DNA of 64,000 nucleotides from Mytilus californianus (lineage: Eukaryota). The notes under the pieces were generated by a model. It was given only the letters and a program-made list of their open reading frames with translations. It did no database searches and was not told the origin of the DNA. Of the stretch, positions 3,667 to 58,800 are shown piece by piece. The stretch lies in NCBI RefSeq assembly GCF_021869535.1, contig NW_026262672.1:1116001-1180000 (forward strand), written 5' to 3'. The position numbers were made by a program, and so were the translations under genes. Position 1 is the first letter of the stretch. Every line of letters begins with the position of its first letter.

Positions 3667-4608
3667 ACAATTCTTTTATTTGCGGACGATACTGTGGTCT
3701 ATTTGACAATTTCATCAGACAGCGACTGCCATAAACTCCAAGAAGACCTGGACAAACTGGCAAAATGGGAAGAACTCTGGAAAATGGAGTTCCATCCTGA
3801 AAAATGTAGTGTCCTCACAGTTACAAAAAAGAAAAAGCCAACCAAGTGGGACTATAAACTCCACGGCCATACTCTGGTGCATGAAACATTAACTAAATAC
3901 CTAGGCTGCACCATCGCAAATGATCTAGATTGGGGAGAACATATAAACAACATCACTGGAAAAGCCAGCCGAAGCCTTGGTTTCCTACATCGAAACCTCC
4001 ACATTAGCTCAAAATCCATCAAAGAGCATGCCTATAAAATATTAGGAAGACCGCAAATGGAATACGCCACGACAGTATGGGACCCGTTCCAGCAAAACCA
4101 CATAGATAAAATTGAAAAGGTACAAAGAAGAGCTGCACGATATGTAACCAGCAGACATAGAAATAGATCAAGTGTCAGCAACATGATAAATGAATTAGGA
4201 TGGAAAAGCTTACAAACAAGACGAAAAGAAGCACGACTCATCATGTGTTACAAAATAACAAACGACCTTGTAGCCATAGACAAGAATAAATATCTACAAA
4301 AACCAACAAGAAGCTCAAACCGGACAGGACAACATACTTACCTATTACAGCCAGCCACCAAAGACTGTAGGAAATGGTCCTTCTTCATAAACACCGTCAA
4401 GGATTGGAACAAACTGCCACCAGATACCGCCACAGCAAAGTCTCTTGAGATATTCAAGTCTCAAGTCACCAAAACCACAAACTAAATCAACAGAACAATT
4501 TGTTTTTATCCTGTTTTTAACCTGTTTTTAATCATGCGCAACTTGCCAGAATATTCATCATGTTGAATGTGGGCAGTATTTGGAAGAAGAAGAAGAAGAA
4601 GAAGAAGA
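3667..4608 (+). mobile_element. 5'-truncated non-LTR retrotransposon (CR1 group, L2/Crack/Daphne-like) with (GAA)n tail
   Basis: RT C-terminal ORF, about 100-nt 3' UTR, then a (GAA) microsatellite tail at about 4583-4608. A possible weak TSD ACAAC lies at 3651-3655 and 4608-4612. Confidence 0.9.
3679..4485 (+). CDS. Reverse transcriptase C-terminal fragment (catalytic FADD motif plus thumb) of the LINE
   Basis: The frame begins TTT GCG GAC GAT (FADD, 3679-3690) just upstream of the listed ORF. It continues W-MEFHPEKC, KYLG, RP-MEYA--VWDP and KIEKVQRRAARYV, uninterrupted to TAA at 4483-4485. Confidence 0.9.
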   Translation, partial: FADDTVVYLTISSDSDCHKLQEDLDKLAKWEELWKMEFHPEKCSVLTVTKKKKPTKWDYKLHGHTLVHETLTKYLGCTIANDLDWGEHINNITGKASRSLGFLHRNLHISSKSIKEHAYKILGRPQMEYATTVWDPFQQNHIDKIEKVQRRAARYVTSRHRNRSSVSNMINELGWKSLQTRRKEARLIMCYKITNDLVAIDKNKYLQKPTRSSNRTGQHTYLLQPATKDCRKWSFFINTVKDWNKLPPDTATAKSLEIFKSQVTKTTN

Positions 4609-36800: not shown

Positions 36801-39800
36801 AAACAATTGGAAGAGCCAAAAGATGCAGATACCTATTATTCGATTAAAGGTAAAATATTGTATTGCTAAGAACAACATTTAAAAATGATCTTAGTTTGCA
36901 TTTCGCAAAGAATGCATAAATACATAAGAAATTTAAATTTCACAAATATATTTGAATGTGTTTAAATTTCACTGAATTGAACAAATCATACAAAAGATAT
37001 TTATTCCGATACGTGAATATACTTAATTTTTATATTCATGTTAAGAAAAGTAATTCTCTCAATATTTTTAACAATAAATTTATGAAATCAAATCATGGAA
37101 TGTAGTACGGCTTTATCAACGAATGTCAAAAAACGAAAAAAACAAAACAAACTATGGAACTCAGAAGAAAGAACAAAACATTGGGTTCTCGTCATGATTA
37201 TGTTTTAGTTTAACTCCTACATTTACCATTTTATGTATACCAGAACGACATGTCCGATGTTAGTGTTTTATGGCCGGAAGACGTTGATCAGAGTTTTACA
37301 GAATACACAACAGATACTGAAAGTGAATGGCGTTTAAAGAAAACAAAATCAGTGACGGATGATTTTCCGTCTGATAATGTTATTTCGGAAAACTGGTGTG
37401 ACTTTGATATTATCGTTTGTCAGATGCTTATTAGAGGTATATTTCCACAATAAGGTATTAATACACAATTTGGATTTGAATGACTCCAGTTTAAGGAATT
37501 AATTTAGGTTTACAGACTTATTTCACATGAAATAAAAAAAAAAGAGGCGTTGGTACACATCAGAAAGTCGAAACAAATAATTTAAAGAGAAACAGACAAC
37601 GCCATGGCAAAAACATGGAAGGCCACGATCGTTGTAACATGTCCGTTTTCATTTGCGACAACTTGTTTCGTCACGGTCAGACATCTTCGTAAAGTGCAAG
37701 TAAAATATTCACAGGGATGACTACCACTTAACACATGGAACCCTTTGTTCAACAGCTTCTCTGTTTGCAGCAACCCGTTTTCAAGAGTGTATTGTCAATT
37801 TCTTGATACAATTCAAACTATGAACAAGTAAAAGTATTCATTTAACCATAAATATACATATCATTAATACCAAATTGTCATTATAGATTAATGGAAGTTA
37901 AAAAAATAAATGCTCATTATAAATTGTACATCTGTTGGCTTATTTTCTGTGTCAAATAGATACGAACTAAGAGATAGGTTCGTCCTGAAATTGATCAAAG
38001 CTACTCATGGCCTGTTTGGAAAAAATGTTTATTTTAGTCTAAAATGTTTGTAAATGAATTGGTATTTGTATTTACTGCCCACCGTATCTTTCAAAGTCTT
38101 TTGGAATATACCTCAAATATAACTTACAAAATTTAAGTGGTCAATAACAATGTATCTCTATGTAGAAATTGTGTTATCTTATATTTCTAGTTTATATGGA
38201 CGAGGATTTAGCAGAGCAAACATTTGTAAGTTGTATTTCTCAGAGAAATAATATAAATATCCTCTAAAAAGGTGGAGGTATGATATAAACCATTATTTAT
38301 TAGTTGCAAAAATAGTTATATTAGTCACGCATAACAAAATTATGTTTATCATTTTGATTCAGAAACATCTTGATATCAAGTTGTCTCTTTAGTGCAGAAA
38401 GGTTATCTGTGATTTCACTTTCACGACATAAACCTGTTGCCGTTCATATACTGACGTATAATGTTCACACATTTTTGTCAATATAATGGAATTTTATGCG
38501 ACTGTCATACAATTAAGAGGTCTAGCTAGCTATAAAACCAGGTTTAATCCGTCATTTTTTACATAAGGAAATGCCTGTACCAAGTTAGGAATACAACAGT
38601 TGTTTTCCAGTCGTTTGGTGTGCTTGAACTGTTATTTTTGCTATTTGATAAAGGACGTTCCGTTTCAAATTTATCTTTGAGCGGTATTTTTGTTGGTTTT
38701 ACTTTTTCGACGTTTGAACACTAATTTAGACGTATTAGACAAAATAAAAAAATAAAAATATATGCTAATACCGATGTCCGACTTTCGTCTTATGAACATC
38801 TGAGGAATGTTTTTTGGTAGAATTGTAATACAATTTTGATCTGAACAGCTCAATGCGGTATGGGTTTTGCTCATTGTTGAGGAATGTATGGTGACCAATA
38901 GTTTTTAACTTCTACGTCATCTTATCTCTGGTGGAAGGTTGTCTCATTGGCAATCATAGCACATCTTCTTTTTTTTTATAATTGGAAGACCGAACAATAA
39001 ATCGTAAAGACATTTTCATTCTTTAATATTATTTTCAAACTTATCCAACGCAGAAAATTCAGTGATGTTAGACAAATTGCTTGCAGTCAATTAAGATCTG
39101 TTCAGTCCATGTTCAGATTGTTTAGTAGTTGTTCCTTACCTGTACCCATCAACATCATGCTGAATGTCTGAAACGCTACTGAACAATACTTAATTGACTG
39201 CAAACGAATTGTCGATTGAATTTAATGCCACATTTTTCGCGGTGGGACTACTAAACATTATGACTTTATATTTGGCCAGGAGCTTTGCAGTGATGAGTTG
39301 TAACGTATGAGCATTTTGCGGATCTGTCAAACAGTTACTTCATGTTATCCGATACTTTGAATTACGAGTGGGACATGCTCTGCACGACAAAGGGTTCATT
39401 CTTGTATATGTTTTATTTTCTATGTCAGCACTGGTTATTTTTTTTTTCATTTAGTTAGTTGGAAAGAAATCTCACAAAAAATTCGATTTTTAATGATTGT
39501 TATTTTATATTTTACTTATGTTTCAATAACATGGCATGAATTTTATGTTTCAGAAAGAAATACATGCATACAATCATACTGCATTGTTCATGTACCTTTT
39601 GAAGAATGGGGAGTGGAATATTCCAAAAAAGTACATAAAATGGCCAATCGATCTGAAGAGTGCTCTAGAATACATATATGAGGAGGTGAAGGTTCTAATG
39701 TTGTTAACAGTGTACAAAAAGAATGAAATAATTATCAATTAGTTATATGCGTGAATAAAAAAACATCTTCATTAACACCTACATCCGGTGTTCCCCATAT

Positions 39801-42800
39801 GAATCACACAACAGGCTTTCAAATAAATCAGCTGTGGGTAAAAAGAACTGAGACAAATATGCACCGAACACTGAACAAATAAATAAAAGAACTGAGACAA
39901 ATATGCATATAATAAATTGACTCATATATTTAACTTGATACTGTACTGCTTTACTTTATAATGAATTGACTCATATATTTAACTTGATACTGTACTGCTT
40001 TACTTTATAATGAATTGACCTAACCAATCTTTACATATTTAACTTGATACTGTACTGCTTTACTTTATAATGAATTGACCTAACCAATCTTTACATATTT
40101 AACTTGATACTGTACTGCTTTACTTTATAATGAATTGGCCTAACCAACCTTTACATATTTAACTTGATACTGTACTGCTTTACTTTATAATGAATTGGCC
40201 TAACAAATCTTTACATATTTAACTTGATATTGTACTGCTTTGCTTTATAATGAATTGGCCTAACCAATCTTTACATATTTAACTTGATACTGTACTGCTT
40301 TACTTTATAATGAATTGGCCTAACCAATCTTTACATATTTAACTTGATACTGTACTGCTTTACTTTATAATGAACTGACTCATATATTTAACTTGATACT
40401 GTACTGCTTTACTTTATAATGAATTGACCTAACCAATCTTTACATATTTTACTTGATACTGTACTGCTTTGCTTTATAATGAATTGGCCTAACCAATCTT
40501 TACATATTTAGTGTTTATTTTAAAAAGGAGTATGAATATATAAAGGAATTATGGTCAAACCAGAAATGCTTTACCGACATGGATTACAAACTGCCTGATC
40601 ACAAAGGTTTGTATCAAATAGTAATATAGCGAATACTTAAATTGATTAAAATTAAACCTTGACACCAATATTATTATTTGAATATTTAAAGTATTACTCT
40701 GATTAATCTTCAGCCTAACAAAAACTAAAAAATGAAACCATGGTTATGTCATAGATGTCTTTGTGACATACAATTGTTTGTCTCCATACTGAGTTGTGAC
40801 TTTCTTGTTAAAGATTTGGAAGTATGCAATTAGGTAAATATTCTAATGTAAATTAGGACTTCCTGTATTAGTCAAGTGCCTGATACATTTATTAAATTTG
40901 AGACAACTTCATCCAATATAACCCCGATACAAATAAATCCAGAAGTTGTGCTTTGCGATGCGAGAATTCAGACAACATTTTGGCGTGTCAAATATTTCGA
41001 AAGCCTTTTAAATTCATATATCTATAGCTTTGTAGTTGATTTCATTTAACAATATTTGATTTGATTGTATCTTCTGTTTTTGTTCAGGCTAGTTTTGTTT
41101 CGTTTTGCTTTGCTTTGTTTTGTTTTGTTTTGTTTGTTTTGTTTTGTAGTACTTACTTCAATTTAGTTGAGCATGGCATATATAAATATAAAAAAGATGT
41201 GGTATGATTGCTTATTAGGCAACTCTTCACCAGGGACCAACTGACAAAAGTTAACAATTATATACAGCCTTCAACAATGAGCAAAACCCACACCGCATAA
41301 TAAGCTATAAAAGGCTTATGTAATATATAACCGGGAACATTTGTGTAAAAGTACAAACTATCAAAATCAGTTGAAAAAGGCTTAACTCACCAGTTCGATA
41401 CGAAGAACATAACAAAAACATAACAAAAAAACAAAAGAAAGTACATATCTGAGAGTCCTCGCAGCTACTAAAAGCTAGTTAAAGGTCAATAACAACTAAT
41501 AAAAAATGTCTAAGACTAAAATATTAATCAATACACGTCCAACATCCAATGGATTAAGTGTTAAAACGTCATTAACAGTCAGAAAAAAACATGACCTTGT
41601 GCAGTTAAATGACTTCAGATATTAATCTAATAGAATAGAGTTATATTATTAAATTGGTCATTTATAGTATAAGTTTACCGGAGCCATTTACAAGTCCGGA
41701 AACTGATTCATAGCACCATTTGGAATGGTTTCATTTATAATTTGTATAACAGATTTACAATTAGAAGAATTATGATAACTTAAAAGGAAATGATAAAGTC
41801 GTTAAAGTGTGAACATGTACGAGAGTTGTATTAGCTAAGATATGTACATTTTGTAAACGCTTTACGCTGTTCCTGCTAGAAAATAGGACGTTGACAAAAA
41901 GTTGTTATCATTATGTTTGTGATAGATTATAGCTAGACGTCCTTAATTTTTGTCAAAATCTAGGAAAAGATGAAGGACTGAAGCACTTTCTGATTACGGA
42001 ATTATCCTGAATCACAAGTTTTACTACGATATATGAGATGCAAGCACTCACTGAAATGAAGGTATTGATTGACTGGAACCCTCAATATATCTGAAATTGA
42101 AATTGAAGATCTTTGCAAGATTTTTTTTTCTATTTTTCTTCAATTCTGCTTGATATGAGTAACAAAACCAAGTATACCAGTATGGGTGCAAAATAAGAAG
42201 CATTGGCATACCGGGGGTTGAGATCTCACAAAACATGTTTAACCCCGCCGCATTTTTGCGCCTGTCACAAGTCAGGAACTTCTTGTCTTTGTTAGTCTTG
42301 TATGTTTTTTTTTTAGATTTTGGTTCGTTCATATGTTTCGGAGTTTAGTGTGACGTCCATTTTCTCTGAACTAGTACACATTTTTGTTTAGGGGCCAGTT
42401 GAAGTCGGTCTCCTGGTGCGGAACTTTCTCTCTGTATTGAAAACCCATTGGTGGCCTTGGGCTATTGTCTGCTCTTTGATCGGATTGCTGTCTCTTTGAC
42501 ATATTCCCCGTTTCCATTCTCAATTTTATTTAGTACGTGTATCAGTTTAATACTTCATTTATTGATTTTATTTCTAACTGTATGTCGAAAGTAATATTAT
42601 AAAAATCTGTGTCTTATATATTACCTTATTTACATTTTATTAGTAAATGATATCAAATGATGCTGTTTGTTTTAAAAGGTTTTACTGGACCAGAAGCAAA
42701 GCTTATGAATAGGGATTCTGAATGTTACGGTCTTGTATTTTTGGCTTTGCTGCATAAACAGTACTGGATTGGTGCCCAACAGCTTGTAGACTTGGAATAT

Positions 42801-45800
42801 GTAAGTTCAAATGAAAAGATTTTTTATAAAAAGAAAAAAGAGTAAATATAGAACCGACCAGTAAATCGTTGACTAATAGCACTTAGTATGCAGTAGTATT
42901 TCACGACATTTGAATACTCATTTCTAATTCAGATCAAAGGCGGCAATATATGGAAAGAACATTATTTCCTACGAGTATTCAATGCATCTCTAAACAGAAC
43001 AAAATGAACTGGTTTCCGATGTCTTAATGTGTGATAGCTAATATTTCCAATCCGTCTATGTGTAGATTTGTTATGTGGAACTGAAAGAATTAAGTACAAA
43101 AATTTCAAAAAAAACAATAACATATAAGAATACTAAAAATCCAACAGGTTCTGTAAATATGGGAAACATTAGTTTACCGAGGTTATCATATCGCGAAAAC
43201 GATTATAGTCAACTTCCCTCAAATTTCTGTTGACGCGGTTGATGTGTAATGGTAACACCCATGTGGGTTATTGAGTGAAGGGATATCATCAGTATGTCTG
43301 AAAGTGAAACTAAAGAACTTTGCAAGGTGTGTTCATTTTGTTTTGTCTTTGACAAAGTTCTGTATGAATTCTGCTTTATACTGGTACAAAAAGAAGTAAG
43401 CAAGTTAGTATAAGTAGTGGCGGATCCAGCAATTTTCATAAAGGAGGGGGGGGGGGGGGGCACAGACTGCCACAAGAGGGGGCACACTTAGTCATGCTTC
43501 AGTGATTCCCTAAATAATCAAACACATTTTTCCGACAAAAGGGAAAGGGGGGGGCACCCTGCCCTCCCTAAATCCGTCTCTGATAAGTAGTTCCCCTTAG
43601 AATACCGACTGTTGAACTATCAATCCACCAAACTAAACCACAGTGTCGTTTAAAAAGTCAAGCACATTCATTATGTCTTTTTTATTGTATTTTTTTTGTT
43701 TAAATCGGTGTAATTTTTTTTTTTACAAAATAAGATTAATCACGGCCATAAAAAGGAATTTGTATCTACGATCCCCATTTTTGTAAAAAAAAAACTCTCT
43801 GTTTCATGAGACGATGTAGTCGATCTGTCATTTGTGCATAGGTAATAGTAGTGCCATTCGTAGAAAATTAAAAACATTTGATATAACTGCAAAACAATAA
43901 ATATTCTGATTAAAGATTTTGTAGTAGATCTTTAGAATTCTTAAGAATCCACATATGACCTACGCCGCTGGTTGTACATACCTCATCATAATATATTCAA
44001 AGGTCATCTTTTACTGCAAAAAGAATTGAACATATGGTAGTCGGTATTTAAACATTCGATTTTCAAATGTTTGGCTTTATTTACATTTTACTTGCATTGG
44101 ACCATTACCGCTGCTGGTATACATGTTTAATCTTTGTTCTAATTCCGATACATCCAGATACTTCTGGAATTGTAGTTCATCATACAATCCTTTTATTATT
44201 AACTGTTGAAATAGTTTCTACTCTCATGTATAGAATAACAAATTGAAAACAACACGTTTAATAATTTCATGCGTCCGAAGCGCTTTTCTGGATTTACCTT
44301 CATCAGGAACGCTCAAAGCCAAACATTTGATATCCGAGGGATGTATAAGTACCGAAACAGTTGAAGAGCTATATGACAAAAAAACCTAAAATAAATAGCC
44401 AAATTCATCTAAGGTCAACTTTGTCTGAGGGAGTTGAAACCTTAGTTTCTTTATAATTTCAAAACTTATAAACAGACAATTTTAGAAAGGTTTGTTATAA
44501 ATCATGTCAGTACCGAAGTACTGACTACTGAGCTGATGATACCCTCGGGGACTGATAGTCCACCAGCAGAGGTATCGACCCAGTGATGTAAAAAATTGAA
44601 AACAACACGTTTAATAATTTCATGCGTCCGAAGCGCTTTTCTGGATTTACCTTCATCAGAAACGCTCAAAGCCAAACATTTGAAATCCGAGGATGTATAT
44701 AGCTGACATAATCCGTATTTGGTACGACTTTAAAAATAGGGGTTTGAATGCTCTTTAACTTCATACTGAATGTTCGCCTTCCAACTTTGTTAATTAAAGC
44801 GCTACTGAAAATTCGTATGAAGACGAAATACAACTCAAATTAAAATACCAATTTTAGAACGATACAATTTTATTTGTTAAACGCCCGTCTGACGCACTAG
44901 ATTACAAGCCTTGTAGATGTGATGAGTTTATATCAAGGAAATTATCATATAGTATACCCTTACAGAAACGCTAACGATACCATACATCATATGACGAAAG
45001 AAACGCTGCACGATATATTACGACGAACGAAAGGCTAATTTATACCATGCGCTAAATGATACAATATATTATTAAATAACGAGAAGCTGTAGTAAACTAG
45101 ATGATTATCTATATAATGAACGAATGATGTATGGAGATACACGAATATTGTACTAACAATGCTCAAACGCTATAAGGACGATCCAAGAATGTTGAAAGAA
45201 CGATGCCCGACTGAAAAAAATATATTTACTCTTACGTTAATTTATATCTGAAAAACTCGTATTGCAAATTGTGTTAAGAAGCGAAGAATTAAACCACAAA
45301 ATATCAGTTTATTCGATGAAGTTTATTTTAAAAAATGAGAACAAACAAAATATATAAAATATATATATCTATATATATAAACAAGTCTAAATTGAAAACA
45401 ACGTTCAAACCTATGGTTGCGTTGGATAAAAACCGCAATTTTTATACGTGTGCATGCAAAACAAATTTCATGGTAGAGGGGTCTAAATACAGCACAAACA
45501 ACATTTTCCAAAATACCAAAAAAGTGAAAAAGTATATTTTAACAAAACGCATTTGACTAGCAGGTCGAACAACGGATGTTCTTAAACCCTGCTGACTGCC
45601 ATGGCGATTGCCAAATAAACAGATCACCAGATGTAACAAAATGGATCTTAATTCTTAATTTAATACCAAACAGAAAACAATATAGGTTCAGATATAATAC
45701 CTTATAAAAGATGACCAAATTAACATTTCTTCATTCAGATTGGGAATCATCATCTTCTTGTTGGGTGTGCTATATTAGAAGATGAAATCAGAAATTGGAA

Positions 45801-46780
45801 AACAGCGACACACTTGAAGGAAAAACTACAACGTTTAAAAAAGTAATGATGCAAATAAAATAAAACATATTACAACGTGTTTATTACTGATTGATTGACT
45901 GCTGACTTAACGTCCAGTTGCAATTATTTCATGCGTTTAAAGGACGAATGCTTTAAATACCTCGACGTAGTGTATGCTTCTTGTGTAGTTAAAGCATTAA
46001 TGTTGGCAATCAAATGTCAATTTTGCGATGAGATGTGCATTGTAGCATAGGTCTCAAAAAACATGTTTAACCCCGCCGTATTTTTGCGCCTGTCCCAAGT
46101 CAGGAGCCTCTGGCCTTTGTTAGTCTTGTATCATTTTTAATTTTAGTTTCCTGTGTATAATTTGGAGTTTAGTATGACGTCCATTTTCACTGAACTAGTA
46201 TACATATTTGTTTAGGAGCCAGCTGAAGGATGCCTCCGGGTGCGGGAGTTTCTCGCTGCATTGAAGACCCTCTGGTGGCCTTCGGCTCTTGTCTGCTCTA
46301 TGGTCGGGTTGTTGTCTCTTTGACACATTCCCCTTTTTCATTCTCAATTTTATTTAATAAATCTGATATTAAAAGACTAATTTAAAAGTATCGTTTACGT
46401 TTGTATTTTAACATCAACAGCTTATTACGACCTAAAGGTATAGTTGACGTCACTGATTTGGTCATGCATTTAAAAAAATATAAAAACATATGATTAAATG
46501 ACAAGCCCTCATCAAGGCCTTTTTAAATGCGTGAACCAAACACCATATAGTAAGTTGTAAAAGACAAAATGTGACACATTTCAGAAGAAAAAATCAAATT
46601 ACCTGATTTATACTATAAGAATGAATGGTTAATGATAAGGCAGACAGAAACAAACGACAAACAACGGATAACATGTGGCTGGCTTGGAAAAGTCACATAA
46701 ACAATGTGTTTGTAAACCTTCCCCTATGTTGTAATGTAACTTCAATTGTTAACAATAGTTATAAGTGAAGGAGATGTGGG

Positions 46781-46815
<35 letters not shown>

Positions 46816-49800
46816 TAAGTCTTTTCATTTTGTTAATATATTGTTCAAGTGTCTTCACTGAAAGAGTTATCTGCATAATTCGGCATATCTATGATGCCGA
46901 TGTTACAAATGAACGAAAGAAACAAATGACAATTAAAGAGAACAAAACAGAAGAAAGAGAGCTGGGTGATCCCATCAATCATGCAGGAAGGCTTTTGTTG
47001 AATCATGGATATCTAATGGATGCTATCAACAGTAAAAACCAAAATTTCGTTGAAAACGACACAGTAAAGAAAATCTTAAAAAAGATGTGGTATGGTACAG
47101 AGAATATAGATGGTCAGACGGTAAGTAAACAAAACTAACACTTCATTGATATGATTAATCCGTTGGCTTGTTTATATCTAAAATCGTTCCGTTACGGGGA
47201 GAGATGAGGAAAGTAAGGAAGCGAATGCAAGACAAGGAGAATCTCAAATATGTAGGAACGAACTAATTGACAGTCAAAGAAATGCTACCTTACCCACACA
47301 TCCCCCCAAAAAAGGAGAAAACAATAGACAAAAAGAAATACGCAAAACAACTTCATCAAATTTTTCGATAATTTTCAAAATGAGCAGAATAATTTGAATA
47401 CTAAGGCAAATATCTAAACAATGTAGAACATCCAAAAACAAGAGAATACCAACGTGAAAATACAAAAAGACATTTGAATCATATCGAAACGATAGAACGA
47501 TATATATATATGCCATCAAGTTTTTGAAAAACGTAGGATGTTCTACTGCAGGAATTGATACCTAGCTGTATTTGGCAAAACCTTTCAGAATTTTAGGTCC
47601 TCAATGCTCTTCAACTTCGTACTTGATTTGGCCTTTAAATATTTCGGTTTCACTGCTAAGACTTTTGTAGATGAAACGCGCGTCTGAATGGTATCTATGA
47701 TGAGGTTATGAAAATATAAGATCATTGGTGTTACAATTGGTAAACAAGACTAGAGCCTAAAGCTACATTAAATATGTAATAAATGTTTTGTTTTCAGACT
47801 TTTTGGTATATTGTTCTGTTCTCAGTCCATCTATTTGTGATGCCTTTATTAATGATTAACATGGAGATGGATAATCGTCTATTACTTTGGTAAGATAAAT
47901 TTTGCAACTCAACATCCTTCTTTATTACAATAAATGCAATTATCGCTATTTTGTGCATTTTTCCTTTGATCTTTTTGGTGATAATTTTTCATATCATGCT
48001 ACTCGCTGGAGATGGAATATTATCGTCAGAAACTAAGGGCGCACGTGACGTTGTCAATGTAAACATGAACGACCTCATTGGCAAAATAGCGATAAACAGA
48101 TTATCAATGGTCTTTCAAACTCGAGGATGTTTATCAGCCACATCTCATCTCAGGGCTGTCGCCCTTTCGAAAAATCATCAATAATCTATAATTATGTATT
48201 TGTTAAAATATGTATTTCATTGAACTATATCAAAACGTTTAATGAGTTCTATCAACCCTAATCACACCTGACTTGAAATCGTTTTTGCTTTCCAATAAGA
48301 TAATTACTATCGTTCATGTTACTCTTTACGTATCTTATTATATCCTTGTCATACTCAGCTTTCGCGCGTGATATCCGATGCCACTTGGGAGAGTGCTATG
48401 ATCTATGCACGTTAAAAACCCATTTAAATAACTCTTAATAGTTGTCCCTATCCATTGTTGTCTGTGGCAGGTGTTAATCTGTAAATTCATCGCCTCGTCC
48501 TACTAAGCAGAATTTATTGCTAATGCTTAATGTGTCAAATCCTTAATTTGCGTTATATGTATTCAACTAGTTGTTGAAAAAACAGCGACCAACCTATCAC
48601 ATAGAATATATAAGAGTCCAACCCAGGAACCCAAAAGCAATATTTTTGTGTCGAGACCTTCATTTCGCTATGCAGATTCACTCCAAAATTCTTCCATCAC
48701 ATCATGCAAAAATGGGAATGTTAAATATAAATACCTTGGTTTCGGTCATGATAAATCTAACTTACTTATAATCACACGCATGCCAAGACCAAAGATTATA
48801 TCATAAAAATGCTGGACATTTTGATCGACAATATATAAGTGTTAAATTTTGTCGATCGATATTTCAACGAAAATTGTAATTTTGTGTGCACTGTAGGAGA
48901 AGTTTAGCATATATAAATCGGACTATGTTTTTGCTGATAAACCCTAACATTGACCTTTGGTTGATTTGAGAGCCTTATCTTACAGATCCTCGGATATTGA
49001 AGTTTTCACATCCTTGGGATTCAAGGGTTCGGGTTTGTTCTTTCCTAATGACATGCATAGTAACTAGCTATACAGGTATCATGAGAGTGACTATTTTTTA
49101 TTCCGGTAACCATTCTAAAATAATCGTTAACTTTTCAATTTATTTCAGGTTTTACAAAAAGTACAAGCTGCCATTCATGAAAATATTTATACATTCGGTA
49201 TGAAAGTTCATATTTTACACAATTTGCAAACCTAAACAATGTAAACATTACAGTTGCCTATAATTGCTAACATCCACTTCACTTGAACTTTGGTGGATAG
49301 TTGTCTCATTGGCAATCATACCACATCATATCATTATTCATGATTTTACTATTTTTTTGGTGATGTTGTACCCTTATAGACTTGCTTATTATATTTTGTA
49401 GAGTACTGTATCATATTTATATGATCCATCGCCTCGTAAGATTTATCGCTGGCTATTATTCAGAAATTTTCTATTTATCATTAGTACATCATACTTGTAA
49501 ATCTTTTTGTTTCTAAGAAATGCATTCACTTAATTGTGTTCATTGTGTCTTGTCTTTTGTAACAAGATTACTCAATGTTTTGTTTAAGTATTCAACTGGT
49601 TAATCGATACACACTTGACTTGTTTAAAATTTCTTTTCACGTTTCAAACCAGTCAATTTCGTTTTATCAACAATCAACGTATTAAAAGTTACATAAATAT
49701 GTCGTATTCATACAGCATCAAAAAGTTTCTATGTTTCTGCATGGTACGCTACTAAAGTCCGTCAACGAATAACACATTAACCCCCAAAAAAAATCACGTC

Positions 49801-52800
49801 AGCATAATATCAACAGTTGTAATTTCAATCTAGTCTACAAAACATTGCAAAGCTAAGAGTGTCTAACCAATATTTTCTAAATAATGACGCTATGGCAATA
49901 TATTTTTGTAATAACATTTGTTTTGTTTATTAATGTTACAGCTGGAATTCACTTTTCTCCTTCTTGCATATGCATACATGTTGCTGTTTGACTACAGAGA
50001 AGATGGAATCACCTATATTGACTTTATTATAATAGCGTGGATGGCTAGTTTCTTTGTAAATGAAACAAAACAGGTGACCTCTTATGTCGACAGCAAAATA
50101 TGTCCAAAATCTCATGCTTTTTCTCAACTGTTTCCTTGATTAAACAGTTAAATCTTATTCATATTTATGATAATTGTACTTATACTTAATAATCATAATA
50201 TCAATTGTTGAACCTCTCCGCCCTTTAGACGCATTCCTTATTACAAACTAATAGAAATATTGTATCACTGATGGCAGAGTAGAAATGAATGACAAAATGC
50301 TATACATTATATATATATAACTCTTTAAATTAAGACAAAACCGTGTCTGGACTTGCATCGCTGTACGCAAATAAATAAGGTAACATGCATACTGAATCAT
50401 AACTGATCATGCCCTCTCATAGACGAACAGTCATTTTAACGAAATATTTCATTGTTAAACGAGTGTGGTAAAATCGAACTATCGGCAGACAAGAATTTGC
50501 TGTACGGCAGATGTAAAAATATCTCACATGCTACAACTCAACATTATCAAGCTGCAGACCAAATATAAAATAATTCTTTTGCAGAGAAGCAAAACAGGTT
50601 TCATGAAAGTTTTATCTTACGCTTAATATTTGACGGACAGGGTCAATTGAAAACTGCGACAAAGGAGATGACTTCAATCTACCATTATGAACATTCTATG
50701 CTCATGTTAAAAGGTTTCAAAAGAACTTAATATGGAGTTTATATACATTTGTATATTTTGGTTATTTTTTACTTTGCCTTCCCCTGTATGATTTTCTGAA
50801 AAGCGTGTTGTTGTTTACAAGTAAGCTCCTGATACATGGTGTCTAGATTATAACGACGGGTGCCACATGTGGAGCAAGATCTACTTACCCTTCCGGAGCA
50901 ATTGAGATCACCAACCGTTTTTGGTGGGGTTCGTGTTGCTCAGTCTTTAGTTTTCTATGTTGTGTTTTGTGTCCTATTGTTTGTCTGTTTGTCTTTTTCT
51001 TTTTTAGCCATGGCGTTGTCAGTTTATTTTCGACTTAGGAGTTTGAATGTCCCTTTTGGTATCTTTCGCGTTTCTTTTATCAAGTCACTCTCAGTTTTGT
51101 AGAAGTGTAATGGACAATATCACTAATGACTGGCTGTAATTATAAGTGTGCTATTTATGAATGATACCTTATGGGAATAATAGTAGTGTTATAGTTTATA
51201 GAATATGAGTAAAAGTTTGAAGAAGGTGAGTAGTAGTTTATAGAAGGTGTGTAATGTTTATAGGAGGTGTGTAATAGTTTATAGACGGTGTGTAATATAT
51301 TATAGGAGGTGTGTAATAGTTTATAGAAGGTGTGTAATATATAAGCTTAAATTGGTTCCGTTCAACATACATGTCTATTTTGTTTTAGGTTATTGTTGCT
51401 TTAATAAGAAAAAGAATCAAACCATATTTTCGTGATTGGTGGAACATAGCAGATTGCATTTTGATTATAGGATATACGTCTGGAATGCTACTGAGAGCTG
51501 TTGAAGGATCTTTTTTCCGAACTACGTCAAAATGTTTATTAGTTGCAATATTTATGCTTATTTGCATAAGATTACTCAGTTTGTACTACATAAATGAGTT
51601 TCTCGGACCAAAGTTAATCATAATTCGAATGATGGTATGTAAGACTATATAAATCCGAAGATGTGGTATGAGTGCACATGAGACAACTCTCCATCCAAGT
51701 CACAATTTGTAAAAAGTTAACAATATTGAATAATAGGTAAAAGTACGGTCTTCTAAACGGAGCCTTGGCTCACATCGAACAGCAAGCTATAAAGGACCCC
51801 AAAATGACTAGTATAAAACAATTCAAGTCTTGCAACAGGCCAACTACGGACCCCTCAAAGTGTTGTTGCAAGGGTTCTAAACGTGCAGAGAGCGTGACAT
51901 TCTCTCTACAAGAGACATCGGATTTAACATCCCCATTCTGACCGGATGTGGCTGCGTACTTGTACATCCCGCTTATCTAAACGGACGCCCCACTTCGGTA
52001 AGGGTTTTACTGCTGGTCTAAAGAAGACCCGTAGTGACCATATTTCTATTCCCGAGTCACCCTTTGAGGTTATGGAAATAATAAGTTTCTTGTTATGTTC
52101 GAATCGTAAGGTTTAATATAATCTCAATATTTCAATATTACGGACAGTCGGAACTGTTGCCTCTCATCCACTTACTTGCTATTGCAAGGTATCAAGACAC
52201 TAAGTTGTTAACCTAACTTTTTACTCCATTTCTTCAATGTGTGTTAGCATTTTTCTACTGAACGCTTTACCAAAACTATTGTAGTAAATAAAAATATTCA
52301 AATCAAATGATCAACATCATTATCACAATAAAAGTGATACTTTTCGAGCTGACGAGGCTAAAATTTACAACATGAAAATCTGAATTTGCTTTTCAAATCA
52401 GAGAAGAACAAGTTTTCCTACTTAGTGATATTATTGGGTTTTTTTTATTTATGTACGGGTCATGTTTGGTATATTCTAATTTCAGATTAACCATACTATT
52501 GCATTCATGACAATTATGTTTGTCATAATGTTTTGGTACAGCGTGTCTTTTTATGCGCTTCTATATCCGAATTCTGAGGCTAGCTGGACAGAGATCGAAA
52601 AAATTTTATCGAATGGATATTGGATATTATTTGGAGAAGTGAACTTAGAAGCTGATACATGTAAGAGTCAAATAAATATTTCATTACCTTAAGTACTATT
52701 TTGTCAAAATGAGAAATGATATGCAAGACAATTCCATGCAATGAGGAATTACAACCGGAACTAGGGAAGATATAACATCTATCATTATCTAATTTTTCAA

Positions 52801-55800
52801 ATTGATATGTGTACCTATTTTGTTACGCTACTGCTTATTACTTTAATAAAATGGTTTATAATTTCGATTTCGTATAGAATGATGCAACTATTATCACTTT
52901 CCTAAATATTAAAGGTACCGTCATATATATTTTTGAGTCAGGAAGGTTTTGGTATTAAGGATCGTTTTGTTAGCAAGAACAAGGTGCATGTAAACTTTCG
53001 TTTGATCTGTTTGAGCTTGTGATTTTGCCTTTTGATAAACACACTTTCCGTTTTGAATTTTCCTTGGAGTTCGGCATTTTTGCTATTTTACTTTTTTACT
53101 GTATTCTAATTTTAAATTTAACTAAAATGCTAATTTATTGTGTAAAGTTCACGTGACATTCACGTGAAAATACTCATGTGAAATTCAACTCAAACGAGAT
53201 TATACGTGTAACTCACATGAAAAAATTTACGTTAATTTCATGTGAATTAAGATTCACATTAATTTCAAGTTAACTGTTTATCTGCTTTTCAGTTCGTTTT
53301 CGACTCATGAGTTTAAATATCAATTTAGCATCTTTTAAAATATATAAATCTTTTACTTTCCGAATACGGTACTCCTACTGGTTTATTATTTGCAGCATTT
53401 AAAAAGCGTGTGCTCTTGCTGTTTGCCTTTGTTTCAATGAAAAAGACTAGATAGATCAAACTTTAATTTACATAACTTAATAGATACACCGTCAAGAAAT
53501 CTAGCGCGGCTTTAATCAACTTTGATCTAATAAATGCATAAAGATTTTATATCTGTGTATATATATTTGGGTTAACGCAAGTAAACATTTTGAGAGCAGA
53601 TGTGAAATAAAATTTGCAAGATGTTTTTGGTAGTTCATCTTACGTAAAACCTGTTTATTTACGAACACATTTTACTGTGACAGTCTTAAAATCATTTTTG
53701 TAGAATTGATTTTGTTATTATATAAATATACATGATTCATACACTTTATTTTTATCTGTTTTCTATTTTGTGAAACTATGCTAATCGGTTTTTTTATAAC
53801 AATTGTGACATGGTTTAGATTATTATACTATCTATCTTCATAAATAAGATATACTTTCTTTTCCCGCAATAAAATTGAGACACCAAATTGTAAATTAAAC
53901 TTGATATGTTTTGAAAGAGAGGGTTCATAAGAGCATAAATTATTAGATTTGTAAATTATAATAATAAGAACAACTCTTTCTCAAGTGAAAAGTACAAAAT
54001 TGTTTGGTAAAATTAGTTTATTATTGCTTCTCTGTTTCTAATTTTGTGTCTCATTCAATCTTAGTGACTGAACCGAACTGCACCTTCAACAAGACAATAT
54101 ATGAAAGTGATGTGAGTGGAGTTTTATCGCGATGTCCAACGAAACTTGGTTTATACGTTACACCTTACTTAAAAGCCCTTTACGCATTGATAGCAGTGGT
54201 CATAATGCTGAATCTTTTGATAGCTATGTACAGGTATAAAGTAAATGGTATACGCTGAACAATGCAAAAAAACATGATATTGAATGTGCTCAGATCTATA
54301 CAAAAGAGAGGCTAAAAATACCAGAGGAAAATTCAAACTCAGAAGTCGAAATCAAAATGACATTGCCAATGGAAAAAACACTTACAAATGTAGTTATTTT
54401 GTTTGTACTCCTGTCTGCTTCGTTAAACAAATGTTATCTGTGACAACGGATTAACACATTTCGTCAACAAGGGTTTCCCTCGGTTTTAGTTTGTAACCCG
54501 GATCTGTTTTCTCTCAATCGATTTATGACTTTTGAACAGTGGTATACTACTGTTGCCTTTATTTACAAATCCTGTAGTCAGCACTTTGTTATTGATACAT
54601 GTATGAAAGATAACTGAATTTTTTGTAAATTTACTGTTTTAAATGTTAAATTATTTGGAACACTAATATTTGTCTATCCCAGGAATAGATCGTATTATCC
54701 GTATCGCACAACTTATCGGAATTTTTGGTTTTTAATACTTTTCAACATTGCATTTGAAAAAAGTATGACAAAAATACTGAACTCCATGGTATATTCAAAA
54801 AGTGGAAGTCCATAAATACTGACAGAATCAAACGTTTGCAACCAAATGGACGAGTGGAAAACAACTTTCATATTCCTGACTTGGAACACGCATTTTCCGA
54901 AAATGGTGGTTTTATCTGGTTTTATAACAAAATAAACCTCCTACTTGTATGACAGTTGCTTATATGTCCGTTATATTGACACAATGTTGGTGAGCAACCC
55001 AAACAGACATATTTTCCAAAGATAAACACATATATTGTTTGTGAAACGAATTTTGACACACTTGCTCAATTGAATTTCAGTAACATTTTTGAGGACGTCC
55101 ATACAAAATCGATGATTTATTGGTCTGAGCTACAGACATCATTTCTTGAGGAATATAGTATCCAAACAATATTTCCAATACACCTTCAGTTACTTACCTT
55201 ACCGGGAACAGTAGTTGCAATTGTGTGGCTTTTCTGCGCAAATCTACGACAGCAGAATTCTGACGGAAATGATCGTACTAAAGAGCTTAATCATCACCCA
55301 CAATTTGTCAGAGGTATGGTGTACATTTCAAAAATAGAAGATTTTCGTACTGTTTGTTTAGATTTAGCAAATTTGCAGACATTTAAAAGAAAGATGTACA
55401 GTTAAACTTTAACAGTTATAACCTCAAGTGCAAATAAAAATGCGAAGAATCAATCAAGGTAAATAATTAAAAACTGGGGGAATCAAATGAACTCCAAAAG
55501 GTTGCTTCGAAAGGGTAAGCGTCTGTTAGTTAACCAACAACCGCAATGCGTATCCACACTTACTCTAAATGTCACAATTGAGCCTTTACTGTAATTTCAC
55601 ATATCGCACGACTATTCTGTTATCCAAAAGAGCAAAAACATGTCGTTAGTGAGTTTGTACACAGCATAGCGTATCGGTCAACAATTTCTAAACCGTTAAC
55701 CCTATGTATGTTGATATCAGTCGTTTTCCACTTAATTGTGTTGATTGATTGATTGATTGTTAGTTGCTTAACGTCCAGTGGCAAATATCTCATGCATATT

Positions 55801-58800
55801 CAGGACGAGAACAAATTAACAATAAATATAATAGGTAATTCCTGTAATAGAGACGGTCCGGGATGAAGGTCGGTGAAAATCTGTACTGGCACGGGAAAAT
55901 GAGGGTACATTGGATAGTAACAGAAATTTAGCCTTGCAACAGGCCACCTCAGACCCCTCAAAGAATTATTGCAAGGGTTCCTAACGTACAAAGAACGTAG
56001 CACTCTCTTTACATGAAGTATCGAATTTAACGTCCCAATTTTGACCGAACGTGGCTGCGAACTTGTTCATCCCTCAAAGCAGATCGGACGTCCCACATTT
56101 GCGATAGTTTTACTCGGGTCGAAGGAAGAACAATGGTGACCATATTTCTATTCGCCAGTCACCCTTGGGGGGGAGGTAACTGTGTTGAAGCATTTTTTTA
56201 ATCATGAAGTTTGTATAGTGTAACGATGCACCGGCGTAAAGCATTGTTTAAAATATGTTAACGCCATGACAAGGGGGTATGTTGCTGCAGAGAAATAGTA
56301 ATTTGACCAAGTCTGCTATTTACTTTGAAGTCGTCTATCTGTGTCAAATTGGAAAATTGAAGATGCTTCGTAATCTTGTTTTGGTGATATCCTTAAGAAG
56401 GAATTTTAATGTAAAAGTACTTATGACCTGTAATGGTTTACTTTTGCAAATTGTGACTTCTTGGATGGAGAGTTGTATCATTGGCACTCATACCACATCT
56501 TTTTATATCTATATTATGATTTTAGTTATCTAGTGTTGACACTTCTCAAAATAATCTATTTTGATAAAAATAGGTGTTGTTCACTTTTTTCGTGTATTTA
56601 AGTGAAGTACCAATTACAGAATATTCATTCGTTGTTTAAAAAGACGTTAAACCAGTGTCCCTGTATAACATGAAGTCTTAAATAAAAAATATTTAAAAAA
56701 AAAATTAAATTAACTATTGATAGTTATCGTAAAAGTATTTGATGCTTTACTTTCAGTTTTTCTCTTTGATTCTAATTATGATTTGCAACTTAAATCGACA
56801 GAAGCAGAGGAGACAAAGGCTCAAAATGACCAAGGGTAAATATACTATTCAATGCATTATTGTCTATTTGTAGTTTATATTTGAATGGTATGTAATGATT
56901 TATAGAGACAGTGTGTTCTTCTTTTTCTTTATTTGAAATCTAATCTTTCCAAAAGTTGTATTTTTCTTTAAGATACATGTTGTCCATGTTGTCTATGTGA
57001 AGAAAAAATTAGTTTTACTAGAGCTTGATTAATGTTTAAACTGTTGTAGCTATGTGTTTTCGTCGTCAAGTGGCCAATATTACAAAGAAGTAAGGACGGT
57101 GTCACATATAAAGATGTTTTCAGGTGAAATCTTAAAAAATCTGGAATTTAAAATTCATATTATAATTCAGAAAAGCATTGGTAAAGAAACAAAATAATCT
57201 CAAAATAATGATAGGTTATGGCACTCCTTTTTGAGATATTTGATTTTTAGAAAATGGCGGGATAAGTTTGACTCGGACTTTAGCCTTATATTTAGCATTG
57301 ACATTATTTAGATCTCAAATCGTAAGAAAAGAAATCTAGAATCTGCTTAAATTTTAGTAATGACCTTTTATGAGCTATTAAAGTCTTCTAGGAAAAGAAA
57401 AAAGGGTGATATGGGGCAAAATATTTTACCTTGTATCGTAGGGAAAACACAAGGAGTCCAACATCTGACAAAAATTCCTTAACCTGAAATGACAACATCC
57501 TTAAACTCTAAACATCAAGTTATAATGTGTGCAATTGAAGGATCGGAAAAAAAGAGAAAACATTAGGATTTGGGGTTTTGGTTTGCATATATAATGTGTA
57601 TGTTTTCAAGGTATAAAGACAATGATCTTAAATTTCCTTCTTCATATTTTCCATAAATACAGATAAAGTCTAGTTGTCCGAGTGGCGTAGGGTTATGGCC
57701 AAAGTGTTGACCATGTCTCCACTGAGGAGAGAATATTTCAGATCTATCAGATCTAACATTGTTAAGGTCACCACGTATATTTCAAATTAGTTGTTCCTAC
57801 TCGAGTCGTTCGTTTTCTGAAATCATGTAATAATTGGTTTGATGATTTAAGATGATCTTTATGTGACAGATCAGCTGTCAAGAATTTATTTGAAATGAAG
57901 AAAAAACATTTGCTATAATGTGCATTTTTTTTTTATTACGGATGACGATTAACTTTTTTTTTGCAGGAAAATAGATGTTAACACAGTTACGGTAAACCTT
58001 TTCTTTTGTTTTAACAGTGAATAATTTTGATTGTCGAATACGAGTGGTTGATTTAGATGTAAATATATGATTAAATCATACATGTCATATAAATCAATTC
58101 GTTATACATAGATTTTTTATACAGAAAGTATTGTGTTTTGGGCAACGTTGGCACTGTTAGTATGTTCATACAACCAAAAGATGACTGAAAATTCAATCAT
58201 ATTGTTTAATATTTATTTATTAAAAACCTTTTTTAAATTGTTCGTTTATAAATTTTTGAAATGATAGAGAAACCAAGGTTTCAGCTCCCTCATGCAAAGC
58301 TGACCTGAGATAGATGTCGCTATTTTTAAGCTCCTTTTATGTTATATAGCTCTTCAGCTGTTTCGGTTCTTGTACATCCTTGGCTTTCAAATATTCCTCT
58401 TTGAGCGTTCATGATGAAGGTAAATCTAGAAAAGCGCTTCGGACGCATGACATTTATAACATGTTGTTTCATTTTCTACAAATAAAAAAATTGTCAATAA
58501 GCTATGATATTTTTTTTCTGAATATGGAATATTTCAGTTTGTTTTGATCTATCCAACGTGAGTCTTTGTGTTTTCGCCATCGAAGCCGCCGTTAAAAGTT
58601 TCAAGTACAGAAAGTCGGGCTGTCAAGACGGTTCAATCGATTGCTCGACTTTATTCATAAAATTTGTTATTGGCAAATTGTGTTACGAGAATAGAGAATG
58701 TTTCAATGTATCGTGGAGTTAATGCAACAGTAGTTTACCGTTGATAAATTTCATAAATTGATGTGAAAGAAACAATTGTGTTAAGCAATTAACAAAAACT

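What the first reader, a model, noticed from the sequence alone, without database searches (positions are those of the whole stretch)
49942..55313. TRPM channel with an intact Ca2+ site and pore but a rewritten TRP box
Seen in the spliced translation: S2 E-T-K-Q and S3 N-I-A-D keep the ExxQ/NxxD spacing, the filter is FGEV, and the pore loop has the cysteine pair. The TRP helix, however, reads SMIYWSELQTSFLEEY. Established: ExxQ/NxxD form the Ca2+ site of TRPM2/4/5/8, and the TRPM TRP box is typically W-K-F-Q-R, whose basic residues contribute to PI(4,5)P2 regulation. Inference: the two basic positions (K, R) become S and Q here, and an acidic E appears, suggesting a Ca2+-sensitive but PIP2-atypical channel from a lineage-specific bivalve TRPM expansion, possibly an uncharacterised subfamily.
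Basis: partly seen in the sequence, partly recalled or inferred. Interest (0 to 1): 0.7.

Follow-up and report, generated by a model that had tools for sequence, protein, structure and literature searches.

The report
Mussel TRPM-like channel, rewritten lipid site
This is an intact mussel ion-channel gene, apparently transcribed, from a mussel/oyster-only branch of the TRPM family that keeps its calcium-binding site and pore but has replaced the positively charged residues that normally hold the membrane lipid PIP2.

Summary
Window 49942-55313 (+) holds five GT-AG exons, S2 to the TRP helix. They belong to a gene of at least 26 exons (25544 to beyond 64000) that is 99.2% identical to an NCBI "TRPM2-like" protein of Mytilus californianus. 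Spliced contigs in three runs, probably RNA, use exactly these junctions. No other TRP exon exists in the window.

The TRP box reads W-S-E-L-Q, aligned W-to-W with WKFQR of solved TRPMs. This is not special to this gene. All 43 members of a monophyletic clade, found only in Mytilus and oysters, lack the box arginine (Q in 32 of 35). Most also carry Glu where TRPM8 R850 / TRPM3 K992 contacts PIP2. All five Ca2+-site residues, the FGE filter and the pore cysteine pair are conserved.

Pfam finds no SLOG or NUDT9H domain. Some paralogues carry MIB/HERC2 and ZZ modules at the N-terminus, a fusion this scan already noted on other DNA of this genome.

The clade's deep placement is unresolved, and the Ca2+-gated, PIP2-atypical reading remains untested inference. 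Bivalve TRPM expansions are already published. I found no paper describing this clade's signature.

The parts
25544..25609 (+). exon 1 with the start codon (MHVCLFQESESEDEGRRKTKNL)
   Evidence: tblastn of P0223 and a GT donor
27402..27498 (+). exon 2
   Evidence: AG/GT
29927..29979 (+). exon 3
32163..32298 (+). exon 4
35510..35616 (+). exon 5 (start of the alpha/beta N-terminal domain)
35798..35897 (+). exon 6
36758..36849 (+). exon 7
37244..37436 (+). exon 8
38191..38225 (+). exon 9
39554..39685 (+). exon 10 (helical region resembling MHR3/4)
40528..40606 (+). exon 11
42679..42800 (+). exon 12
45739..45842 (+). exon 13
46850..47120 (+). exon 14, pre-S1 (VKKILKKMWYG; the Trp equivalent to TRPM3 W761 lies within 47082-47096)
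47798..47889 (+). exon 15 (S1)
49149..49197 (+). exon 16
49942..50073 (+). exon 17, S2, with Ca2+ ligands E617 and Q620 (50062-50073)
51389..51634 (+). exon 18, S3-S4 and the S4-S5 linker. Holds Ca2+ ligands N639 and D642 (51443-51454), S4 R681, and E690 at the TRPM8 R850 position (NEFLGPK, 51593-51613)
52486..52660 (+). exon 19, S5, pore helix and filter F-G-E-V (52630-52641)
54065..54233 (+). exon 20, pore-loop cysteine pair C766/C784 (54076-54135) and S6 (NLLIAMY)
55081..55313 (+). exon 21, TRP helix. Holds W831-S-E-L-Q835 (55121-55135), E840-E841 (E841 is the fifth Ca2+ ligand), Q845 at the R1008 position, and a degenerate TRP box 2 (IFPIHLQ)
56757..56835 (+). exon 22 (VFLFDSNYDLQLK...)
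   Evidence: (joint 55313>56757)
57967..57991 (+). 25-nt micro-exon 23 (KIDVNTVT)
   Evidence: AG/GT and the reading frame closes
61944..62012 (+). exon 24
63195..63257 (+). exon 25 (heptad-like C-terminal helix). The last exon, 23 aa, lies just beyond base 64000

Best explanation
The finding is the channel core of an intact gene, apparently transcribed, for a 996-residue TRPM-superfamily cation-channel subunit of Mytilus californianus or a very close relative. The gene belongs to a strongly diverged clade seen only in Mytilus and oysters, with many paralogues per species. In this clade the S1-S6 fold, the pore helix, the F-G-E filter, the pore-loop disulfide pair and all five residues of the intramembrane Ca2+ site of TRPM2/4/5/8 are under purifying selection. 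The basic residues that contact PI(4,5)P2 in TRPM8 and TRPM3 have been replaced across the clade. The S4-S5 Arg/Lys is Glu, the TRP-box Arg is Gln, and the TRP-box Lys is mostly Ser. The N-terminus has no detectable SLOG/MHR1/2 domain and there is no NUDT9H domain. Most likely mechanism (inferred): a tetrameric, Ca2+-permeable non-selective cation channel whose opening depends on cytosolic Ca2+ binding in the S1-S4 domain, and whose coupling to membrane phosphoinositides is lost, weakened or rebuilt on other residues. It is not gated by ADP-ribose. Shown: gene structure, splicing, homology, residue conservation and clade membership. Inferred: Ca2+ gating, altered PIP2 dependence and permeability.
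For: The ORF is intact: 25 exons, 973 codons, no stop, all GT-AG. Spliced contigs in X1-X3 show four consecutive exact joints, with depth on exons and near zero on single-copy intron. The product is 99.2% identical to NCBI XP_052063914.1 (P0223). The TM-TRP region matches TRPM3/1/5/7/4/2/8 structures at E 4e-34 to 1e-11, with W aligned to W. The AF2 model aligns residues 165-760 with TRPM8 residues 430-1020 at Z 15-17. The clade of 43 rows is monophyletic (SH-aLRT 100). Column counts: Ca2+ site E/Q/N/D/E in 33/33, 33/33, 33/34, 32/34 and 33/35 clade rows. S4-S5 position: E 26, A 5, S 2, against K/R in 36 of 39 beta-clade rows. W+4: Q in 32 of 35, against R in 36 of 39. W+1: S in 23 of 35. W+9: E in 35 of 35. 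The PIP2 contact residues of TRPM8 (R850, R997) and TRPM3 (K992, R1131) come from PMC9647539. Pfam finds only Ion_trans. No WKFQR-like motif occurs in any frame of the window, and no second TRP exon was found. dN/dS among three 98-99% identical copies is 0.28-0.58.
Against: No function was measured. The X1-X3 libraries are only guessed to be RNA. The one certified RNA run (X21, 6% read) has no reads on the exons. dN/dS rests on 7-18 substitutions per class and is only moderately below 1. This gene's own branch is long (0.44), its nearest non-californianus relatives are at most 62% identical, and nonsynonymous variants are frequent, so relaxed constraint on this copy is possible. Four lysines (VKKILKKMW) flank the pre-S1 Trp, and most paralogues keep K at W+14, so a rebuilt lipid site cannot be excluded. 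The AF2 models have middling confidence (pLDDT 64-66).
Confidence: 0.7

Rival explanations
1. This particular copy is a young, decaying duplicate under relaxed constraint. Its WSELQ and SIQT changes are drift and have no functional meaning.
For: There are at least three 98-99% identical loci or haplotypes in M. californianus. The stem leading to this sub-lineage is long, and no orthologue above 62% identity was found in four other Mytilus species. dN/dS reaches 0.58, with 8-18 nonsynonymous differences among the copies. The certified RNA run X21 has no reads on the exons.
Against: All three copies keep 973 open codons and every splice site. Spliced transcripts appear in three runs. dN/dS is below 1 in every pair. 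The TRP box, the Ca2+ site and the pore are identical in all copies. The clade-wide part of the rewrite (Q at W+4, E at S4-S5) is conserved between mussels and oysters.
Confidence: 0.12
2. It is an ordinary TRPM2-type (beta) channel, as its NCBI name says. Its regulation by ADP-ribose and PIP2 is essentially conserved, and the lipid is held by other basic residues.
For: An AU test does not reject a clade uniting the family with the mollusc beta TRPMs (p 0.53). The S4-S5 motif LGPK and the best hits of the S3-S4 exon are of the beta/TRPM2 type. A lysine cluster lies in pre-S1, and most paralogues have K at W+14.
Against: There is no NUDIX/NUDT9H or LSDAT/SLOG Pfam match, whereas every canonical mollusc TRPM found has them. 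The protein ends about 150 residues after the TRP helix. Both direct PIP2-contact positions shared by TRPM8 and TRPM3 are non-basic, and one is acidic. Identity to canonical mollusc TRPM2-like proteins is only 30-35%.
Confidence: 0.1
3. The clade is a fast-evolving offshoot of TRPS (ced-11-like), TRPM-gamma or TRPM-beta-like rather than of alpha or beta. Part of its divergent TRP domain is then inherited.
For: With a choanoflagellate outgroup the clade falls outside a group holding all sampled alpha and beta sequences (SH-aLRT 87). TRPS is reported to have a divergent TRP domain, and some oyster 'TRPM2' entries have been reassigned to TRPS.
Against: That position is where long branches attract, and the tool flagged this. 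TRPS is described as keeping TRP box 1, SLOG and Nudix, and as having one or two copies in molluscs. None of these fits. No TRPS, gamma or beta-like reference sequence could be fetched, so the idea is untested.
Confidence: 0.08

Closest known systems
Ca2+-dependent beta-clade TRPMs: TRPM2, TRPM4, TRPM5, TRPM8, and invertebrate TRPM2-like channels such as Nematostella nvTRPM2
   Same: 6TM fold. The Ca2+ site is complete: E and Q on S2, N and D on S3, and a TRP-helix Glu. S4 Arg, the LGPK linker motif, the pore-loop cysteine pair and, as in invertebrate members, a Glu in the filter. The helical region resembling MHR3/4 aligns structurally.
   Different: The TRP box is W-S-E-L-Q, not W-K-F-Q-R. 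The S4-S5 Arg/Lys is Glu, and the R1008 equivalent is Gln. TRP box 2 is FPIH instead of PPP. No SLOG/MHR1/2 or NUDT9H is detectable. Identity is only 30-35%.
Alpha-clade TRPMs: TRPM3, TRPM1, TRPM7
   Same: These are the best sequence matches among solved structures for S1 to TRP (TRPM3 122 bits, E 4e-34). The pore helix and filter are similar (YW.I.GEV).
   Different: Alpha members have LGPY rather than LGPK, and TRPM3 has Arg rather than Gln at the second S2 Ca2+-site position. They keep WKFQR and K992/R1131 for PIP2. The alpha sequences form their own clade that excludes this family.
MIB/HERC2-ZZ-TRPM-like fusion proteins of Mytilus and oysters (for example P0112, P0107, P0109, P0118; NCBI 'uncharacterized protein' or 'MIB')
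   Same: Same monophyletic clade (SH-aLRT 100). Same TRP-box type, and P0112 reads W-S-E-L-Q as well. Same S4-S5 Glu (or Ala/Ser in some, Ser in P0112), same Ca2+ site, and a homologous region just upstream of the channel.
   Different: This gene has no MIB/HERC2 or ZZ exons within the 25 kb upstream that the window holds, and its product has no such Pfam match.
TRPS (TRP soromelastatin, C. elegans ced-11)
   Same: A TRPM-like channel restricted to invertebrates and reported to have a divergent TRP domain.
   Different: TRPS is reported to keep TRP box 1, SLOG and Nudix, and to have one or two copies in molluscs. None of this applies here. The phylogenetic relation could not be tested.

Membership tests
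TRPM superfamily (TRPM/TRPS channel core) | S1-S6 and TRP helix homologous to TRPM channels; group-I TRP fingerprint (NLLIA in S6, Trp in the TRP helix) | tested here: met
   phmmer against the PDB gives only TRPM chains at the top, E 4e-34. Pfam Ion_trans matches at 1e-08. Foldseek and VIA-align rank TRPM3/8/7/2/4 first, Z 15-17.
TRPM (melastatin) sensu stricto | N-terminal melastatin region including MHR1/2 (SLOG; Pfam LSDAT_euk PF18139), said to be present in all TRPM and TRPS (PMC13143021) | tested here: inconclusive
   No LSDAT, TRPM-like or SLOG Pfam match in this protein or in any clade member, whereas all canonical mollusc TRPMs have them. Model residues 165-420 align with MHR3/4 of TRPM8/4/3. 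The first 300 residues fold as an alpha/beta domain with no significant structural match: best Foldseek E 0.013, best VIA Z 4.9. TRPM MHR1/2 appears only among the weak hits.
TRPM (melastatin) sensu stricto | TRP box 1 W-K-F-Q-R and the proline-rich TRP box 2 | tested here: not met
   Box 1 reads W-S-E-L-Q and box 2 reads I-F-P-I-H-L-Q. In the beta clade, R at W+4 occurs in 36 of 39 rows. In the family, Q occurs in 32 of 35.
TRPM (melastatin) sensu stricto | Phylogenetic placement inside the alpha or beta clade | tested here: inconclusive
   The free tree puts the clade outside alpha plus beta (SH-aLRT 87, with a long-branch warning). The AU test does not reject union with the mollusc beta clade (p 0.53). 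No gamma, beta-like or TRPS references were available.
TRPM2-like (the NCBI product name) | C-terminal NUDT9-homology (NUDIX) domain and an ADPR-binding MHR1/2 | tested here: not met
   No NUDIX or PF25969 match. The protein ends at residue 996, about 150 residues after the TRP helix.
Ca2+-binding TRPMs (TRPM2/4/5/8 type site) | E and Q on S2, N and D on S3, and an acidic residue on the TRP helix | tested here: met
   E617, Q620, N639, D642 and E841 are present and 94-100% conserved in the clade. Actual Ca2+ binding is not testable with these tools.
PIP2-dependent TRPMs (TRPM8/TRPM3 type site) | Basic residues at the start of S4-S5 (R850/K992) and in TRP box 1 (R997/R1131), plus K995 and R1008 of TRPM8 | tested here: not met
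   E690, Q835, S832 and Q845 occupy these positions. The contact residues are taken from PMC9647539.
TRPS (soromelastatin) | Grouping with ced-11; SLOG and Nudix; TRP box 1 as in TRPM | not testable with these tools
   No TRPS sequence could be fetched; the accessions are listed. The described domain features are absent here.
Pteriomorph MIB/ZZ-TRPM-like clade | Monophyly with the Mytilus and oyster proteins; shared W-x-x-x-Q...FLEEY TRP helix | tested here: met
   SH-aLRT 100 with 35 and with 43 rows. Motif table. The MIB/HERC2 and ZZ modules themselves are absent from this gene.

The most novel reading that the evidence does not exclude
The Mytilus/oyster clade is a distinct, undescribed subfamily of the TRPM superfamily. 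Its ancestral PIP2 pocket has been dismantled, with a charge reversal at S4-S5 and loss of the TRP-box Arg and Lys, while the Ca2+ site is kept. Its melastatin SLOG domain has been reduced and, in many paralogues, preceded by MIB/HERC2-ZZ protein-interaction modules. On this reading these are Ca2+-gated channels controlled by something other than phosphoinositides or ADP-ribose. This gene would be the most acidic TRP-helix variant of the clade, with no basic residue from W to W+14.
Probability: 0.35. Interest if true: 0.7.

Novelty: new variant of a known kind. Interest (0 to 1): 0.55.

Why it matters
PIP2 dependence is treated as a near-universal property of TRPM channels, and the TRP box as their signature. 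Here a natural, conserved, multi-gene clade keeps the Ca2+ site and the pore but replaces both PIP2-contact positions shared by TRPM8 and TRPM3. That offers a ready-made test of what those residues do. It would also help interpret the very large TRPM expansions of intertidal bivalves, which are currently all labelled 'TRPM2-like' and discussed as heat or oxidative-stress sensors. It further shows that the statement that all TRPM/TRPS members carry the full melastatin region may have exceptions.

Tried and rejected
1. The TRP exon alone gave no PDB hit even at E 10, so the alignment had to come from the whole S1-TRP region of the orthologue.

2. A search for an alternative exon or frame that restores WKFQR found none. 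I used a six-frame motif scan and tblastn with 44 family proteins.

3. Looking up the DNA encoding P0001 found nothing on record. P0223 and P0210 were used instead.

4. I could not obtain TRPS, gamma or beta-like reference sequences. The third homology search, seeded with the divergent Bulinus protein P0171, returned TRPM7 (alpha) anchors but nothing named ced-11. Accession numbers are known but cannot be fetched here.

5. I first leaned toward placing the clade outside the beta group. The AU test showed the data do not reject union with the mollusc beta clade, so I dropped that claim.

6. Identifying the first 300 residues as SLOG/MHR1/2 by structure gave no significant match.

7. The hypothesis that MIB/ZZ exons lie upstream in the window found none in bases 1-25,500.

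8. Literature searches for MIB/HERC2/ZZ together with TRPM found nothing relevant (one search was a malformed query).

9. dN/dS against the nearest non-identical paralogues was not attempted, because about 60% protein identity means saturated dS.


Full report
**What is there.** Region 49942-55313 on the + strand contains five exons: 49942-50073, 51389-51634, 52486-52660, 54065-54233 and 55081-55313. Each has an AG acceptor and a GT donor, and their phases join in frame. They encode S2 (FFVNETKQ), S3 to the S4-S5 linker (WWNIAD ... CIRLL ... NEFLGPK), S5, the pore helix and filter (YWILFGEVN), the pore loop with two cysteines plus S6 (NLLIAMY), and the TRP helix (SMIYWSELQTSFLEEYSIQTIFPIHLQ). 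The window coordinates of each motif are given under parts.

**The whole gene.** An HMMER scan of 1.84 billion proteins with the S3-S4 exon found P0001, an 805-aa NCBI model from Mytilus californianus. Its 90% identity cluster contains the 996-aa P0223 (XP_052063914.1, 'TRPM2-like'). Mapping P0223 onto the window and resolving each junction gave 25 exons from 25544 to 63257. All are GT-AG, and one is a 25-nt micro-exon at 57967-57991. The final 23-codon exon lies just past base 64000. The spliced product has 973 codons, no stop, and 8 differences from P0223, which is 99.2% identity. At the nucleotide level the window is mostly 97-99% identical, introns included, to two loci of assembly GCA_021869535.1 (L001, L002). 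The window is therefore M. californianus or a very near relative. The three copies are either haplotypes or very recent duplicates.

**Expression and splicing.** In three small runs of one study (X1-X3, kept as Logan contigs, library type only guessed to be RNA), single contigs of 703-1176 nt join 51634>52486, 52660>54065 and 54233>55081. Two of the runs also join 55313>56757. Depth is 11-24 on exons and about zero on single-copy intron bins. No variant falls in the W-S-E-L-Q codons. The variants in those contigs are three nonsynonymous (S782P, V792I, G879E), two synonymous, and one I844N seen in a single contig. A certified RNA-seq run (X21, 6% read) gave no reads on the exons, so expression is tissue- or stage-limited, or low. 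No alternative TRP exon exists. A six-frame motif scan and tblastn with 44 family proteins found only the one at 55081-55313.

**Is the TRP box really rewritten?** The TRP exon alone matches nothing in the PDB. The S1-TRP region of the orthologue matches TRPM3 at 4e-34, then TRPM1, 5, 7, 4, 2 and 8. The alignment places iyWSELQtsfleey over qvWKFQRyqlimtf. So the K, F, Q, R positions hold S, E, L, Q.

**This is a property of a clade, not of this gene.** Homology searches returned about 45 relatives at 38-98% identity. All are from Mytilus (five species), Saccostrea and Ostrea. The next hits are canonical mollusc 'TRPM-like 2' proteins at 30-35%. Trees of the channel core recover the group as monophyletic (SH-aLRT 100 with 35 and with 43 rows) on a long stem.

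Residue counts for the clade against 39 beta-clade sequences are as follows.

| Position | Clade | Beta clade |
|---|---|---|
| W+1 (TRPM8 K995) | S 23, A 4, R 4, L 3 | K 16, C 9, Y 5, H 4, R 2 |
| W+4 (TRPM8 R997/998, TRPM3 R1131) | Q 32 of 35 | R 36 of 39 |
| S4-S5 start (TRPM8 R850/851, TRPM3 K992) | E 26, A 5, S 2 | K/R 36 of 39 |
| W+14 (TRPM8 R1008) | K 24, E 6, Q 3 (this gene has Q) | R 39 of 39 |
| W+9 | E 35 of 35 | variable |

The PIP2-contact assignments come from PMC9647539, which summarises the TRPM8-PIP2 cryo-EM structures and TRPM3 mutagenesis. W-S-E-L-Q also occurs in paralogue P0112. This gene's nearest relatives read W-R-[QK]-[IK]-Q. This gene therefore has the most acidic TRP helix of the clade, with no basic residue from W to W+14.

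**What is kept.** The five Ca2+ ligands of TRPM2/4/5/8 are E617, Q620, N639, D642 and the TRP-helix E841. They are 94-100% conserved in the clade, and so are S4 R681, the F-G-E filter and the cysteine pair C766/C784. Most invertebrate sequences in my sample carry Glu in the filter (32 of 39). Gln occurs in 5 of the 39 beta-clade rows, presumably the vertebrate TRPM2-type sequences in the sample.

**Domain architecture.** Pfam finds only Ion_trans in this protein. It finds no LSDAT/SLOG, no TRPM-like N-terminal families, no NUDIX and no TRPM_tetra. Every canonical mollusc TRPM in the searches carries PF18139, PF18171 and PF25508. An AF2 model of the orthologue (pLDDT 66) aligns residues 165-760 with TRPM8 residues 430-1020, that is MHR3/4, pre-S1, the TM domain and the TRP helix, at Z 15-17. 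A separate model of the first 300 residues (pLDDT 64) is alpha/beta but has no significant structural match. TRPM MHR1/2 appears only among the weak hits. Several paralogues carry MIB_HERC2 and ZZ domains in front of the channel. This gene has no such exons in the 25 kb upstream that the window holds.

**Deep placement.** The beta clade was anchored on Pecten XP_033724821, using Table S1 of PMC13143021. The alpha clade was anchored on fish TRPM7 sequences. The free tree puts the family outside a group containing all alpha and beta sequences (SH-aLRT 87), but at a position typical of long-branch attraction. An AU test does not reject a clade of the family plus the mollusc beta TRPMs (p 0.53). 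TRPS, gamma and beta-like references could not be fetched. Placement is therefore unresolved.

**Constraint.** Among the three near-identical copies, dN/dS is 0.28, 0.42 and 0.58, from 7-11 synonymous and 8-18 nonsynonymous differences. This is below 1 but has low power. The stronger argument for function of the motif is its conservation between mussels and oysters. For this copy, the evidence is the open reading frame, the intact splice sites and the spliced transcripts.

**Literature.** Large, lineage-specific TRPM expansions in bivalves are published: 167 TRP genes in M. trossulus, and 21 'TRPM2' copies in C. gigas. The 2026 MBE survey states that the full melastatin region is present in all TRPM and TRPS members. 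It sampled only Pecten and Octopus among molluscs for its main tree. I found no paper describing this clade's TRP box, its S4-S5 change or the MIB/ZZ fusion.

**Verdict.** The functional claims remain untested. I rate this a new variant of a known kind, of moderate interest.

Noticed in passing
window 58882-61123 (intron between the exons at 57967-57991 and 61944-62012): A 50-bp minisatellite of about 46 copies at 74% match. It coincides with strongly positive GC skew over 56-62 kb. Copy number and identity differ from the L001 and L002 loci.
   Followed up: partly
window 3667-4482 (+): A 272-codon open stretch with a weak RVT_1 match to the tail of a reverse transcriptase (E 3.4e-06, below Pfam's cutoff). 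It is a retrotransposon fragment upstream of the gene.
   Followed up: partly
window 51650-51900, 53043-53096, 54470-54900, 55750-55950, 56300-56520 (introns): Short intronic segments have very high depth in all four runs, up to about 20,000 in contig word depth. Reads join 53043 to about 54850 on opposite strands. These look like copies of abundant transcribed repeats in inverted orientation on either side of the S6 exon.
   Followed up: no
L001 and L002 (M. californianus GCA_021869535.1: contig JAKFGE010000054.1, and scaffold JAKFGE010000011.1 at 73.94 Mb): Three copies of this 38-kb gene, about 98-99% identical (window, L001, L002). NCBI also annotates a 21-member cluster at 90% identity or more, spread over several LOC numbers. 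Whether these are haplotigs or recent segmental duplicates is unresolved.
   Followed up: partly
proteins P0097, P0100 and P0101 (M. californianus LOC127712112, isoforms X1, X27 and X19): Isoforms of one paralogous gene differ in their S6-TRP sequence (WSQIQ...SIET against WSQLQ...SVQT). This suggests mutually exclusive duplicated exons, or tandem genes merged into one model.
   Followed up: no
proteins P0122 and P0131 (M. edulis, M. coruscus): By precomputed Pfam, one clade member carries a CARD domain (PF00619) together with ZZ. Another carries an endonuclease/RT-type domain (PF14529), probably a model fused with a transposable element.
   Followed up: no
proteins P0090, P0080, P0171/P0237, P0073: Other TRPM-like lineages outside this clade also have non-canonical TRP boxes. 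P0090 has no Trp. P0080 reads W-N-Y-E-N. The Bulinus and Biomphalaria proteins read W-C-[FY]-Q-[KN], and Bulinus P0171 at least also has a degraded Ca2+ site (Biomphalaria P0237 was not checked). The choanoflagellate protein reads W-C-T-Q-Y. Among mollusc beta TRPMs the box Lys is often C, H or Y.
   Followed up: partly
window 44240-44699 and 39897-40511: Two features flagged by other notes of this scan, a hammerhead retrozyme and a minisatellite, lie in introns 12 and 10 of the gene model built here. Exon 11 starts at 40528.
   Followed up: no
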